Virus record (IMG/VR): IMGVR_UViG_3300024265_000604
Span: 1-6,838 of that record
Reading direction: 5' to 3' (one strand)
Length of the DNA stretch: 6,838 bases
Position numbers and translations under genes: made by a program. Below are positions 5,610 to 6,838 of this stretch, piece by piece. The notes below the pieces were generated by a model that was not told where the DNA came from, made no database searches, and saw only the letters and a list, made by a program, of their open reading frames with translations. Each line of letters starts with the position of its first letter. Within the stretch, counting starts at the first letter, position 1.

Positions 5610-5852
5610 TTAGCTTGAACGTGCTTTAGGTAAAAACATCATAACTACGGAAATAATTGCTATAATAGGAAGTAAGGTGACCAAAAGTACTAAAACTGTA
5701 GGGTCAATAACGTCAGCCAGAGTATCGCCAGATGTGGCATTTACAATTACATTTCCCGCATTACCAATTAATCCGAGAGCTATAGGGAAAATTACAGCTA
5801 TAATAATTAATGCGACAGCTAAAGTTATAACCTTTCTATATGATTCAGCCAT
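5610..5852 (-). CDS. Putative major capsid protein of spindle-shaped archaeal virus type (two hydrophobic helices, hairpin), 80 aa
   Basis: MAESYRK-VITLAVALIIIAVIFPIALGLIG-loop with NAT sequon-DPTVLVLLVTLLPIIAIISVVMMFL-PKARSS. Each helix has an internal proline, as in SSV1 VP1 (recalled as IGIVLLPVI...TLLNLVPLFYIL), and the tail is basic. First gene of the operon, followed by a terminator. ATG at 5852 is preferred over the TTG at 5861 used by the track. Confidence 0.78.
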   Translation of the reverse strand: MAESYRKVITLAVALIIIAVIFPIALGLIGNAGNVIVNATSGDTLADVIDPTVLVLLVTLLPIIAIISVVMMFLPKARSS

Positions 5853-5884
5853 TTTTATCAAAAAATCTTTTTTTTATGAAAAAT

Positions 5885-5936
5885 TTTATAAATTTAGTTA
5901 TAAATAGTAATGTTTGTTCACTTTTAAGGTTTTTGG
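5885..5936 (-). promoter_or_regulatory. Candidate archaeal promoter(s) for the structural operon
   Basis: Minus strand has CCAAAAAC-CTTAAAAG (BRE-like plus TATA-like, 5936-5921) and a second candidate TTTATAAA at 5892-5885. The AT-rich background prevents choosing between them. Confidence 0.4.
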
Positions 5937-5963
5937 TTGAAAATATTTCATATTTTTCTTTAC

Positions 5964-6012
5964 TACTAAAGAATTTATAATTATACTAAAGAATTGATAA
6001 TTATACTAAAGA
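5964..6012. repeat. 20-bp tandem direct repeat, about 2.5 copies
   Basis: TACTAAAGAATTTATAATTA (5964-5983), TACTAAAGAATTGATAATTA (5984-6003), TACTAAAGA (6004-6012). One mismatch between the full copies. Confidence 0.9.
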
Positions 6013-6020
6013 TTTAAATA
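6007..6020 (+). promoter_or_regulatory. Archaeal TATA box with purine-rich upstream element for the small-gene arm (probably leaderless mRNA)
   Basis: TAAAGA-TTTAAATA. The box at 6013-6020 is centred about 26 nt upstream of ATG 6043, the usual archaeal TATA-to-start spacing, and that ATG has no SD. Confidence 0.6.
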
Positions 6021-6042
6021 GTAGTTATTCCTTTATTTAATT

Positions 6043-6195
6043 ATGACACATTTAAAAATGAATGCTTTTGAAAAAGATGATATAATTACTAAATTAAATA
6101 AAATTTATTTAAATTCTAAGAACTTAAATAAAACAGATATTAAAGCTATAATCAGAGTTATGGATATAGTTCTTAATAAAATAGAAAATAAGTGA
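6043..6195 (+). CDS. Small hypothetical helical protein, 50 aa (not in ORF track)
   Basis: Manual translation: MTHLKMNAFEKDDIITKLNKIYLNSKNLNKTDIKAIIRVMDIVLNKIENK*. Positioned correctly behind a TATA box. Alternative start at ATG 6058. Confidence 0.65.
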   Translation: MTHLKMNAFEKDDIITKLNKIYLNSKNLNKTDIKAIIRVMDIVLNKIENK

Positions 6196-6201
6196 ATAAA
6201 A

Positions 6202-6351
6202 ATGGCAACAAGAATAATAGAATGGAAAAATGCTGACAAAACTGAATATGAAATTATGAAATGGATATACAATTATAATAAACATGAAGTTTATAGATAT
6301 TTTAGAAATTCAGCGGGAATAATAACTAAGGATAAAATAGGAAGTTTATAA
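6202..6351 (+). CDS. Small hypothetical protein, 49 aa (not in ORF track)
   Basis: Manual translation: MATRIIEWKNADKTEYEIMKWIYNYNKHEVYRYFRNSAGIITKDKIGSL*. Preceded by AAGTGAATAA (6190-6199), 6 nt after the previous stop. Confidence 0.68.
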   Translation: MATRIIEWKNADKTEYEIMKWIYNYNKHEVYRYFRNSAGIITKDKIGSL

Positions 6352-6376
6352 ATTAACCAAAAGTGAATAATTATGA
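6351..6376 (+). repeat. Repeated gene-leader element, copy 1 (contains GTGA SD-like motif and start codon)
   Basis: AATTAACCAAAAGTGAA-TAATTATGA, identical to 6636-6662 except for a 1-nt indel. Confidence 0.85.
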
Positions 6377-6603
6377 GATTGATTGAAAAAAATATTAAAG
6401 AAATGAAAACAAAACGATATGGAGTAAAAACATTATTAATTTTTAAAAGTAATTCTAATTTTCATGGTTTTATTGAATATACAGCTACAAGAAAAATGCC
6501 TAATGGTAAGGTTTTTAGAGTAGATAAAGCAATATATAATCAAAATGGCAATCATATAGCTTATTATCCAAAAACAAAACCAATGTTTAATACTAAGTTT
6601 TAA
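6373..6603 (+). CDS. Small basic beta-rich hypothetical protein, 76 aa
   Basis: ORF track. ATG lies within the repeated leader and a T-tract follows the stop. Lys/Arg-rich, no recognised family. Confidence 0.72.
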   Translation: MRLIEKNIKEMKTKRYGVKTLLIFKSNSNFHGFIEYTATRKMPNGKVFRVDKAIYNQNGNHIAYYPKTKPMFNTKF

Positions 6604-6614
6604 TTTTTCTTTTT
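6604..6614 (+). terminator. Candidate oligo-T terminator
   Basis: TTTTTCTTTTT immediately after the TAA of 6373-6603. Confidence 0.45.
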
Positions 6615-6635
6615 GAAAGTTAATTAGATAAACCT

Positions 6636-6662
6636 AATTAACCAAAAGTGAAATAATTATGA
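6636..6662 (+). repeat. Repeated gene-leader element, copy 2
   Basis: AATTAACCAAAAGTGAAATAATTATGA, containing the ATG at 6659. Confidence 0.85.
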
Positions 6663-6838
6663 TTGAGAAAATTGTTAAAGTATTAATATTAATTACATAT
6701 TTAATATTATCAATTCTTTCTATATTAGAAATAATATTTTTTAGTAAGTTTTATTGTATCATATTTCAAATTACAATAATAACTCCATGTTTTATATTTC
6801 TGTATATAGCATTTAGTATGATTAATATAACAGATTGA
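6659..6838 (+). CDS. Small 2-TM membrane protein, 59 aa (not in ORF track)
   Basis: Manual translation: MIEKIVKVLILITYLILSILSILEIIFFSKFYCIIFQITIITPCFIFLYIAFSMINITD*. Starts in leader copy 2 and ends with TGA at the last base of the window. Confidence 0.65.
   Translation: MIEKIVKVLILITYLILSILSILEIIFFSKFYCIIFQITIITPCFIFLYIAFSMINITD

What the first reader, a model, noticed from the sequence alone, without database searches (positions are those of the whole stretch)
6190..6680. Repeated leader plus shared N-terminal codons in front of unrelated small genes: cassette-like array
Seen: AATTAACCAAAAGTGAA(A)TAATTATGA precedes both 6373 and 6659 (one indel). Similarity continues into coding DNA: ATTGAAAAAAATATTAAAG vs ATTGAGAAAATTGTTAAAG (16/19; IEKNIK vs IEKIVK), after which the proteins are unrelated (basic soluble vs 2-TM). 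A shorter copy, AAGTGAATAA-NN-ATG, precedes 6202 with the same spacing as at 6373. The repeat is much longer than an SD needs. Inference: a portable expression/recombination unit that lets small genes be gained, lost or shuffled by recombination between leaders without an integrase. It could instead be a shared translational-regulator site.
Basis: partly seen in the sequence, partly recalled or inferred. Interest (0 to 1): 0.66.

Follow-up and report, generated by a model that had tools for sequence, protein, structure and literature searches.

The report
Repeated hairpin-plus-ribosome-site adaptor between virus genes
The repeated "leader" is real: it is one copy of a roughly 60-base module (stop codons, RNA hairpin, ribosome-binding motif, start codon) that a family of viruses of Asgard archaea places between small accessory genes, and where genes have been gained or lost between relatives the breakpoints I could map lie at or next to these modules.

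Summary
The window is part of WyrdV7, a published 15.3-kb linear spindle-type virus of Lokiarchaeia. The 17-mer at 6351 and 6636 belongs to a conserved intercistronic unit. The unit runs: upstream stop, U-tract, 9-bp AU-rich hairpin, CCAAAAGUGAAUAAU, AUG. The window holds one full copy (6601-6661), one 5'-truncated copy (6351-6375) and one motif-only copy (6190-6204).

WyrdV7 has at least 7 hairpin units. A covariance model found 42 hits (E<0.01) in 145 kb of related contigs, 40 of them on the sense strand of the small-gene arrays (two training units at E 0.009 I did not place). The hairpin is supported by compensatory changes, with G.U but no A.C mismatches, so it most likely acts in the mRNA. 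An outer helix pairs the U-tract with AAAAGU. Each array starts from a BRE/TATA box exactly 22 nt before a leaderless first ATG. Internal genes use the unit.

Relatives differ by whole [unit+gene] cassettes, and the polB-MCP slot holds different genes behind the same promoter. The closest analogues are T4-phage PeSLs and mycobacteriophage SAS/ESAS. No excision product, circle or precise deletion was seen.

The parts
5965..6024 (+). Three tandem 20-nt repeats (ACTAAAGAATTTATAATTAT / ACTAAAGAATTGATAATTAT / ACTAAAGATTTAAATAGTAG) in the divergent region between the capsid-protein gene and the small-gene array. They are conserved in L027 and L033.
   Evidence: One metagenome contig lacks exactly 20 nt at 5964.
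6008..6020 (+). Archaeal BRE/TATA-like promoter AAAGATTTAAATA, 22 nt before ATG 6043. This geometry predicts a leaderless first cistron.
   Evidence: AAAGATTTAWATA followed by exactly 22 nt and an ATG opens the first ORF of an array in 6 viruses. That this gives a leaderless mRNA is inferred from known archaeal promoter geometry.
6043..6195 (+). ORF1, 50 aa, first cistron. It has no start-associated motif upstream.
6190..6204 (+). Motif-only copy: AAGTGAA (6190-6196), 5-nt spacer, ATG 6202. The ORF1 stop TGA (6193-6195) lies inside the motif.
6202..6351 (+). ORF2, 49 aa.
   Evidence: It is identical in L018-L021.
6351..6375 (+). 5'-truncated unit: a remnant of the 3' arm (ATTAACC, 6352-6358), then CAAAAGTGAATAATT, then ATG 6373. 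It has no U-tract and no 5' arm, and no structure is predicted (-1 kcal/mol, z +1.2).
6373..6603 (+). ORF3, 76 aa, basic. Its only homologue (84% identity) sits in another virus's slot behind a different 56-aa gene.
6601..6661 (+). Full intercistronic unit. Its parts are: stop UAA 6601-6603; U-tract 6604-6615; 3-nt bulge 6616-6618; 5' arm 6619-6627; loop 6628-6633; 3' arm 6634-6642; CAAAAGU 6643-6649, which pairs with the U-tract; AAGUGAA 6646-6652; AUG 6659-6661.
   Evidence: MFE -13.1 kcal/mol, z -3.5, with stop and start codons at the base of the helix.
6659..6838 (+). ORF4, 59 aa, hydrophobic with two predicted TM segments. It converges on the protein-primed DNA polymerase gene just beyond the window.
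6382..6400 (+). N-terminal codons of ORF3 (IEKNIK) that match 6662-6680 of ORF4 (IEKIVK) at 16/19.

Best explanation
The repeat is a conserved, self-contained intercistronic adaptor of wyrdviruses, the spindle-type viruses of Asgard archaea. Each small-gene array is probably transcribed from one BRE/TATA promoter as a polycistronic mRNA whose first cistron is leaderless. Internal cistrons are headed by a start-associated sequence, CCAAAAGUGAAUAAU-AUG, whose GUGA core is a Shine-Dalgarno-like site at a fixed distance from the start.

Where the gap between genes is long (about 52-68 nt), the gap is filled in most cases by a bipartite RNA hairpin. The hairpin has an inner 9-bp AU-rich helix and an outer helix in which the U-tract, which follows the upstream stop codon, pairs with AAAAGU of the start-associated sequence. 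The likely function is translational coupling and insulation. The hairpin brings the upstream stop next to the downstream ribosome site, and a ribosome terminating on the stop sits on the U-tract and frees the site. This step is inferred.

Because the unit carries stops, hairpin, ribosome site, ATG and even the first codons, any ORF placed behind it is expressible. Its near-identical 50-65-nt copies also serve as homology patches at which [unit+gene] cassettes are gained, lost or replaced. No integrase is involved.
For: 1. Extent. Further copies lie in front of 11 plus-strand genes of the full contig L018, and 7 of them have the hairpin.

2. Distribution. The covariance model found 42 hits at E<0.01 in 145 kb from 14 contigs. 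Forty are on the sense strand of the small-gene arrays and none on the strand of the structural genes or polB in those contigs; the two units of the most distant relative used, L036 (one E 0.0059, one only E 0.56), lie in front of called genes, and the strands of the L017 and L022 hits at E 0.00065-0.009 were not all checked against gene calls.

3. Inner helix. 94% of cells are paired, 6 of 9 pairs carry compensatory changes, 0 of 500 shuffles reach this, and slid controls give 13-49%.

4. Strand of action. Mismatches in correctly aligned rows are 9 G.U against 0 A.C. The outer helix, predicted independently by RNAalifold, has U.G in 20 and 10 sequences at two pairs. Both point to a sense-strand RNA.

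5. Distant relatives keep the layout with other stems: GTTAAGG/CCTTAAC followed by canonical GAGGT in L036, and CTATTAGG/CCTATTAG in L034.

6. Geometry. The distance from the upstream stop to the hairpin has a median of 16 nt, and a T run is present in 37 of 38 units.

7. Promoter. AAAGATTTAWATA plus 22 nt plus ATG occurs only at first cistrons, in 6 viruses.

8. Cassette indels. L030 equals L018 plus [unit + 105-aa gene], and it also carries an extra [unit + 65-aa gene]. In both cases the flanking units share the same loop sequence.

9. The polB-MCP slot. It keeps the same promoter and 3' T-tract but holds 50/49/76/59 aa, 47/49 aa or 65/54/51 aa genes, holds 56/76 aa in another relative, and holds 0-3 unrelated genes in more distant relatives.

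10. The near-identical class A units head genes without a homologue in 8 of 13 cases, against 3 of 16 for other hairpin units (p=0.027).

11. Contigs from four studies pile up on the promoter and on the unit but hardly cover the ORFs between them.

12. The unit is 88-91% identical between genomes whose polB genes are 74-78% identical at the nucleotide level.
Against: 1. There are no transcript data. No RNA run holds the sequence. The polycistronic mRNA, the leaderless start and the coupling mechanism are therefore all inferred.

2. AAGUGA is an imperfect match to the canonical GGAGGUGA. The structural genes of the same virus use GAGG-type motifs instead, so the motif may be recognised by something other than, or in addition to, the 16S rRNA.

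3. The U-tract looks like an archaeal oligo-T terminator and resembles the operon-end tracts. This would argue for separate transcripts.

4. U-tract:A-tract pairing is easy to obtain in 23% GC DNA, so the outer helix is less secure than the inner one.

5. The G.U excess may be partly compositional, because the sense strand is G-rich relative to C.

6. The recombination evidence is comparative only: two clean indels plus slot variation. Unit identity within a genome (0.91) is barely higher than between genomes (0.88), so there is no strong sign of ongoing homogenisation.
Confidence: 0.62

Rival explanations
1. Terminator-promoter cassette in the strict PeSL sense. The T-tract terminates the upstream gene, the AT-rich palindrome is a TBP/TFB promoter or carries one, and every unit-headed gene is its own short-leader transcript.
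For: A T run of 4 or more occurs in 37 of 38 units. The same kind of T-rich tract closes the arrays (window end; L018 15016). Archaeal terminators are oligo-T and archaeal promoters are AT-rich (established knowledge). The PeSL precedent is in PMC2839356.
Against: The virus's own promoters are AAAGATTTAWATA at a fixed 22 nt from the ATG, and nothing like that lies in the units. The distance from hairpin to ATG varies from 15 to 29 nt, while the distance from motif to ATG is fixed. The stems covary, tolerate G.U, and can be GC-containing and not TATA-like, as with GTTAAGG in L036. The U-tract pairs with AAAAGU.
Confidence: 0.15
2. Operator or stoperator-like DNA site. The palindrome is bound by a virus-encoded dimeric DNA-binding protein that controls the accessory arrays.
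For: The repeat is a perfect palindrome. Its sequence is conserved more strongly than polB. A clade-specific change occurs on both arms (GTTAATTAG/CTAATTAAC against GATAATTAG/CTAATTATC). Wyrdviruses encode many Zn-finger proteins (10.1101/2021.07.29.453957).
Against: Mismatches are 9 G.U against 0 A.C in the inner helix, and about 30 U.G cells occur in the outer helix. These would be A.C on the other strand. Three or more different stem sequences coexist in one genome. Loop length and sequence are free. All copies lie in the sense orientation directly before start codons.
Confidence: 0.1
3. mRNA processing or stability element. The hairpin marks a cleavage site or blocks exonucleases, so that the array is cut into stable monocistronic mRNAs. 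Translation is led only by the Shine-Dalgarno-like motif.
For: The RNA-level structure has the same support as in the main explanation. It includes a single-stranded U-rich tract and a 3-nt bulge. This reading is compatible with the main explanation rather than exclusive of it.
Against: It does not explain the tight distance between the stop codon and the hairpin, nor the pairing of the U-tract with part of the start-associated sequence. No bulge-helix-bulge or K-turn signature is visible on inspection.
Confidence: 0.1
4. Ordinary ribosome-binding sites plus chance similarity in very AT-rich DNA.
For: The DNA is 20-30% GC. Single exact 17-mer matches in 14 unrelated IMG/VR contigs look like chance.
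Against: 0 of 200 shuffles reach the observed matches. There are 42 covariance-model hits down to E 1e-10, the strong ones all on one strand, with only three weak palindromic echoes (E 0.5-0.8) on the other. Covariation is seen. The unit is conserved above the level of coding sequence.
Confidence: 0.02

Closest known systems
PeSLs (promoter-early stem-loops) of T4-type phages (Arbiol et al. 2010, PMC2839356; Comeau et al. 2014, PMC4122927)
   Same: Both are a short, conserved composite regulatory motif with a stem-loop, repeated in intergenic spaces of the variable regions and running up to the SD/ATG. Both are associated with ORFans. In both, relatives differ by [motif+ORF] cassettes flanked by two motifs, the stem sequence differs between phage lineages, and no dedicated recombinase is present.
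   Different: PeSLs contain a sigma-70 early promoter, and their stem-loop is a demonstrated terminator. Here no promoter is detectable in the unit, the U-tract precedes the hairpin and pairs across it, and the host is an archaeon. PeSL mini-circles were shown by inverse PCR. Nothing comparable is available here.
Start-associated sequences (SAS) and extended SAS (ESAS) of Cluster K mycobacteriophages (Pope et al. 2011, PMC3203893)
   Same: Both have an asymmetric conserved motif directly upstream of many start codons, in one orientation. The motif contains an SD-like core plus conserved positions that cannot pair with rRNA. About half the copies also have an inverted repeat with a variable spacer just upstream, and the inverted-repeat consensus differs between subclusters. 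Both are often found in front of unrelated genes. The function of SAS/ESAS is unknown.
   Different: The sequence is unrelated (GGGATAGGAGCCC against CCAAAAGTGAATAAT). The ESAS arms are 17 bp and imperfect. SAS/ESAS have not been linked to cassette indels. The hosts are bacteria.
Integron cassette arrays (attC sites, Pc promoter, IntI)
   Same: Both have one upstream promoter and a row of small promoterless ORFs separated by imperfectly conserved hairpin-forming repeats whose structure is conserved more than their sequence. In both, gene content varies cassette by cassette.
   Different: No integrase was found. The hairpin lies 5' of each ORF together with its ribosome site, not at the 3' end of a cassette. 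The stems are perfect and lack extrahelical bases. The GTT/AAC ends are in the opposite arrangement to R'/R''.
Stoperators of Cluster A mycobacteriophages (as cited in PMC3203893)
   Same: Both are many copies of a short oriented site in the intergenic spaces of one transcription direction.
   Different: Stoperators are 13-bp asymmetric DNA sites for the phage repressor. They have no hairpin and no link to start codons.

Membership tests
Wyrdviruses (genome context) | A His1-like two-helix capsid protein, a large adhesin, a block of five conserved membrane-protein genes and a Zot-like ATPase without a TM domain, with or without pPolB. The contig is named in the describing paper. | tested here: met
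   The window equals L018:1602-8439, and L018 is contig Ga0209976_10001236. That contig is called WyrdV7 in 10.1101/2021.07.29.453957. Zot hits are. pPolB (PF03175) is. The gene order is shared with L022-L026.
PeSL | A conserved composite motif repeated in the intergenic spaces of variable regions. | tested here: met
PeSL | The motif contains a consensus promoter. | tested here: not met
   No BRE/TATA of the virus's own type lies in any unit. The stems covary like RNA.
PeSL | The stem-loop acts as a transcription terminator. | not testable with these tools
   A hairpin is present, but the U-tract lies 5' of it. No RNA data are available.
PeSL | Association with ORFans and with insertion, deletion or replacement between close relatives. 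| tested here: met
PeSL | Mini-circles or deletions formed by exchange between neighbouring motifs. | tested here: inconclusive
   Only contigs could be laid. The joints from promoter to unit and from unit to unit have unknown content between them.
SAS/ESAS | An asymmetric motif in one orientation, directly upstream of the start codons of many unrelated genes. | tested here: met
   In L018, 17 of 18 AAGTGAA sites are on the plus strand, and most lie 3-6 nt before an ATG.
SAS/ESAS | A subset of copies has an upstream inverted repeat with a variable spacer, and the inverted-repeat consensus is lineage-specific. | tested here: met
SAS/ESAS | The consensus GGGATAGGAGCCC, in Cluster K mycobacteriophages. 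| tested here: not met
   The sequence is different and the host is an archaeon (one search compared). This is an analogue, not a member.
Integron | An IntI-type tyrosine recombinase next to the array. | tested here: not met
   A Pfam scan of 30 of the roughly 35 called WyrdV7 proteins gave no recombinase; the few not scanned are short (50-107 aa).
Integron | An attC architecture (R''-L''...L'-R' with extrahelical bases) at the 3' end of each cassette. | tested here: not met
   The 9-bp stems are perfect and lie 5' of the ORF with its ribosome site. This was judged by inspecting the sequences.
Shine-Dalgarno site | A purine-rich match to the 3' end of 16S rRNA at a fixed short distance upstream of the start. 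| tested here: inconclusive
   The spacing is fixed at 3-6 nt after AAGTGAA. GGAAGUGA matches 7 of 8 positions of the canonical GGAGGUGA, which is established knowledge. The homologous position in L036/L037 carries GAGGTGA. The host 16S rRNA could not be read.
Rfam families | A match to any curated RNA family. | tested here: not met
   There was no hit at E<=1 in 5800-6838.

The most novel reading that the evidence does not exclude
Wyrdviruses carry a recombinase-independent gene-cassette system. In this reading a mobile, self-contained translation-coupling adaptor (all-frame stops, bipartite hairpin, specialised ribosome site, ATG and first codons) moves ORFs between co-infecting viruses. Movement would occur by homologous exchange, or by hairpin-promoted template switching during protein-primed replication. 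This would make it an archaeal counterpart of PeSL mini-circles and integron cassettes. The non-canonical AAGUGAA site would mark a separately regulated class of accessory genes.
Probability: 0.25. Interest if true: 0.8.

Novelty: new variant of a known kind. Interest (0 to 1): 0.6.

Why it matters
Almost nothing is known about gene-expression signals in Asgard archaea or their viruses. In the paper that describes wyrdviruses, searches for the words intergenic, promoter and Shine-Dalgarno returned nothing.

This unit gives testable sequence-level predictions for Lokiarchaeial gene expression:
- a BRE/TATA box 22 nt before leaderless first cistrons;
- Shine-Dalgarno-led internal cistrons;
- a covarying intercistronic RNA hairpin.

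It is also a compact, portable expression adaptor that could be tried in genetic tools for these organisms. In addition, it extends the PeSL idea, that conserved regulatory cassettes direct gene gain and loss to safe places, from T4-type phages to an archaeal virus family. It offers a mechanism for the "arrays of short genes" and the plastic replication-module region noted for wyrdviruses.

Tried and rejected
1. An exact 17-mer scan of IMG/VR gave 14 contigs with one match each and no shared context. I treated these as chance.

2. The longer unit pattern found nothing in IMG/VR or in the 185,579 species genomes. The unit is therefore not a host repeat, at least not in exact form.

3. The 76-aa protein and polB found no relatives in viral contigs or genome contigs.

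4. L017, the only IMG/VR relative found through the ATPase, ends before the region homologous to the finding.

5. A generic hairpin-before-ATG finder was useless in 23% GC DNA because spurious hits were everywhere. I replaced it with a curated alignment and a covariance model.

6. Code 4 (TGA=W) was considered because ORF1 and ORF2 are in the same frame across the TGA. I rejected it: the 981-aa ORF is open under table 11, and the gene calls in all sources use table 11. I named no other code.

7. No RNA run holds the stretch, and only Logan contigs could be laid. Starts, ends and rare deletion variants could therefore not be seen.

8. The two contigs carrying the 84%-identical 76-aa homologue came back without DNA, so only their gene maps were used.

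9. K-turn and bulge-helix-bulge readings of the 3-nt bulge were considered by eye and dropped because the defining G.A pairs or second bulge are missing.

10. Terminal inverted repeats were not evident at the ends of L018, in line with the paper calling the contig "nearly complete".
Full report
**What the window is**

The window is an IMG/VR record flagged as a "provirus". It is in fact an internal piece, L018:1602-8439, of the 15,316-nt JGI contig Ga0209976_10001236. Medvedeva et al. (bioRxiv 10.1101/2021.07.29.453957) describe this contig as WyrdV7, a nearly complete linear genome of a wyrdvirus, a spindle-type virus assigned to Asgard (Loki) archaea.

The minus strand of the window carries the morphogenetic module:
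- a Zot-like ATPase;
- five small membrane-protein genes;
- a 981-aa adhesin-like protein;
- an 83-aa two-helix capsid-type protein.

The finding lies in a divergently transcribed array of four small plus-strand ORFs of 50, 49, 76 and 59 aa. The array converges on a protein-primed DNA polymerase gene just outside the window. polB homologues carry the source names Promethearchaeota and Thorarchaeota MAG. The DNA is 19-31% GC.

The 17-mer AATTAACCAAAAGTGAA occurs exactly at 6351 and 6636, which no shuffle reproduced. AAGTGAA lies 5, 5 and 6 nt before the ATGs at 6202, 6373 and 6659. The 16/19 match in the first codons (6382-6400 against 6662-6680) is in the top 0.18% of 3321 pairs of gene starts, and nearly all other pairs that score as high are orthologues. 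The similarity therefore does continue into the coding DNA.

**What the repeat is part of**

Reading the whole contig shows the same motif before 11 plus-strand genes. In its full form it is a unit of about 55-65 nt with these parts in order:
- the stop codon of the upstream ORF, often within TAATTAA;
- a U-tract (TTTTATTTTT or TTTTTCTTTTT);
- G-TAA-G;
- a 9-bp inverted repeat with a 5-6-nt loop of free sequence;
- CCAAAAGTGAATAAT;
- ATG.

The window holds one full unit (6601-6661). It also holds a 5'-truncated unit that keeps only the last 7 nt of the 3' arm (6351-6375), and a motif-only copy in which the TGA stop of ORF1 sits inside AAGTGAA (6190-6204).

In WyrdV7 the intergenic gaps are bimodal. 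Gaps of 6-21 nt carry the motif alone. Gaps of 52-68 nt carry a hairpin in 6 of 7 cases.

**Spread among relatives**

Related contigs were fetched through polB and through a pattern scan of metagenomes. They carry the same unit. I aligned 38 instances. A covariance model built from them found 42 matches at E<0.01 in 145 kb. Forty of these lie on the sense strand of the small-gene arrays, and none falls in a structural module or in polB. The remaining two are training units whose strand I did not check against the gene calls for every contig. The only opposite-strand matches are three weak palindromic echoes at E 0.5-0.8. There is no Rfam match. The pattern is absent from 185,579 species genomes.

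**The hairpin is selected as a structure, most likely in RNA**

On the MAFFT alignment the nine inner pairs are 94% paired. Six pairs show compensatory changes, no shuffle reaches the score, and slid controls give 13-49% pairing.

Stems differ between unit classes within one genome:
- GTTAATTAG/CTAATTAAC;
- CTAATTAG/CTAATTAG;
- CTATTTAG/CTAYTTAG.

Stems also differ between genomes:
- GATAATTAG/CTAATTATC in L023, L024, L026 and L034;
- CTATTAGG/CCTATTAG in L034;
- CTTATTAT/ATAATAAG in L022;
- GTTAAGG/CCTTAAC in the distant L036.

The layout stays the same throughout.

In correctly aligned rows the non-Watson-Crick cells are 9 G.U, about 9 U.U, 1 U.C and no A.C. A double-stranded DNA site would be expected to show both kinds of transition mismatch.

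Folding the window's unit gives -13.1 kcal/mol (z -3.5). It reveals an outer helix in which the U-tract pairs with CAAAAGU. This places the UAA of ORF3 and the AUG of ORF4 at the base of one bipartite hairpin. RNAalifold finds this outer helix on its own. With the outer helix included, 92.8% of cells pair and 10 of 16 pairs show compensatory changes. U.G occurs in 20 and 10 sequences at two outer pairs, and C-G replaces U.G where the U-tract is interrupted by C. I treat the outer helix as less certain, because U:A pairing is cheap in this composition.

**How the array is probably expressed**

AAAGATTTAWATA, a BRE plus TATA box, lies exactly 22 nt before the ATG of the first ORF of a small-gene array in six viruses, including window 6008-6020 before 6043. 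It was not found before any internal gene. By the known geometry of archaeal promoters this predicts a leaderless first cistron. First cistrons also lack the motif.

Internal cistrons have AAGUGAA at a fixed distance from the start. GGAAGUGA in the class B units matches 7 of 8 positions of the canonical archaeal GGAGGUGA, and distant relatives carry GAGGTGA at the same place. I therefore read the motif as Shine-Dalgarno-like.

It is nonetheless more conserved than pairing requires. The structural genes of the same virus use GAGG-type motifs. The whole unit is 88-91% identical between genomes whose polB genes are 74-78% identical. The motif may therefore also be recognised by another factor.

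The stop of the upstream ORF lies a median of 16 nt (range 11-37) before the inner hairpin. This puts it directly at the 5' end of the U-tract. A terminating ribosome would cover the U-tract and open the outer helix. I infer translational coupling and insulation as the most likely role. mRNA processing or protection is a compatible alternative. Nothing here is shown at the RNA level, because no RNA run holds the sequence.

**Is it a cassette system?**

1. L030 is collinear with the right array of WyrdV7, except that it carries one extra [unit + 105-aa gene] of 375 nt between the 60-aa gene and the EYCKFY gene. It also carries an extra [unit + 65-aa gene] further left. In both cases the two flanking units have the same loop (AAAACC twice, ATTTAC twice).

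2. The polB-MCP slot keeps the same triple-repeat promoter and the same 3' T-tract, but its contents differ:
   - 50/49/76/59 aa in the window;
   - 47 aa, then a unit, then 49 aa in L027;
   - 65/54 aa, then a unit, then 51 aa in L033;
   - 56/76 aa in the contigs with the only homologue of the 76-aa protein;
   - two, none, one or three unrelated genes in L022, L023, L024 and L026.

3. The near-identical class A units head genes with no homologue in the other five genomes in 8 of 13 cases. The figure is 3 of 16 for the hairpin units in front of conserved early genes (p=0.027).

4. In contigs from four independent studies, the promoter island (5860-6040) and the unit (6600-6652) are covered many times over, with many different continuations. 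The ORFs between them are hardly covered.

5. WyrdV7 has no recognisable recombinase.

This is the same kind of evidence on which PeSLs were first proposed (PMC2839356). What is missing is any direct product:
- no circle and no precise 285-bp deletion was seen;
- the contig joints from promoter to unit and from unit to unit have unknown content between them;
- unit identity within genomes (0.91) is only marginally above that between genomes (0.88).

I therefore regard recombination at the units as a likely by-product of repeated homology, or of hairpin-prone replication. It is not a demonstrated mobility mechanism.

**Comparison with known systems**

The unit works like a hybrid of two bacterial-virus elements.

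PeSLs of T4-type phages are conserved stem-loop-containing regulatory cassettes next to ORFans. Exchange between them makes indels (PMC2839356, PMC4122927).

SAS/ESAS of Cluster K mycobacteriophages are a conserved SD-containing start-associated motif. About half the copies are preceded by an inverted repeat with a variable spacer, and the repeat consensus is lineage-specific (PMC3203893).

The unit is a member of neither family. It has no promoter of the virus's own type, its sequence is unrelated, and the host is an archaeon. It is integron-like in having one promoter and hairpin-separated promoterless ORFs, but it fails the integrase and attC tests.

I found no description of it in the wyrdvirus paper or in a 2026 Asgard virome paper. 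I classify it as a new variant of a known kind.

**Limits**

All relatives are metagenomic contigs with predicted genes. The alignment used for covariation contains three rows that MAFFT placed out of register; these counted against the structure, not for it. The host's 16S 3' end was not read.

Noticed in passing
window 5965-6024: There are three tandem 20-nt repeats in the divergent promoter region, and the last one carries the BRE/TATA box. They are conserved in L027 and L033. One cold-sediment contig lacks exactly one 20-nt copy, so copy number varies. They may be tandem promoters or regulator sites.
   Followed up: partly
L019 against L018 (L019 5315-10743 = L018 7241-12614): A second virus is 97% identical to WyrdV7 from the capsid-protein gene through the small genes, polB and the early genes. 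Its ATPase-to-adhesin module, however, is only about 64% identical, with a 797-aa adhesin in place of the 981-aa one. This is a recent swap of the structural module, with a breakpoint near the capsid gene.
   Followed up: partly
whole window (IMG/VR record): The record is labelled "provirus", but it is an internal 6.8-kb piece of a 15.3-kb linear viral contig with viral genes on both sides. The provirus call looks like a trimming artefact.
   Followed up: yes
L018 minus-strand leaders; L034 and L035 leaders: The family uses three different pre-start motifs. GAGG-type motifs precede structural genes. AAGTGAA precedes accessory-array genes. GAGTTGATTAA precedes other small genes and, as GTTGATTTAA, the capsid gene. 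One contig joins the hairpin to the GAGTTGATTAA type (loose end at 6646). This suggests separately regulated translation classes.
   Followed up: no
L026 1539-1600 (minus strand, leader of gene 1312-1539): The leader consists of three tandem copies of TTAGTGAATTAAA-like sequence, that is, a triplicated start-associated motif.
   Followed up: no
L018 13878-13946 against L030 1430-1576: The unit-headed ORF is 48 aa in L030 but is cut to 22 aa in WyrdV7 by a 2-nt gap. It is a decaying cassette gene behind an intact unit.
   Followed up: partly
window 6836-6838 and L018 8440-8470; L018 15016-15044: The sequence after the last gene of both plus-strand arrays is the same T-rich tract (TAATTAAYTTCTTTTTCTTTTTTTA, 91% over 35 nt). 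It is probably the array terminator.
   Followed up: no
L017 1-496; L026 8168-8708: Some relatives carry two tandem paralogues of the small two-helix capsid protein, as the wyrdvirus paper notes. WyrdV7 has one.
   Followed up: no
L030 2227-2544: The 105-aa gene of the extra cassette (MKGKIITLCGSSKF...) is the only cassette gene that looks enzyme-like by eye. It was not searched.
   Followed up: no
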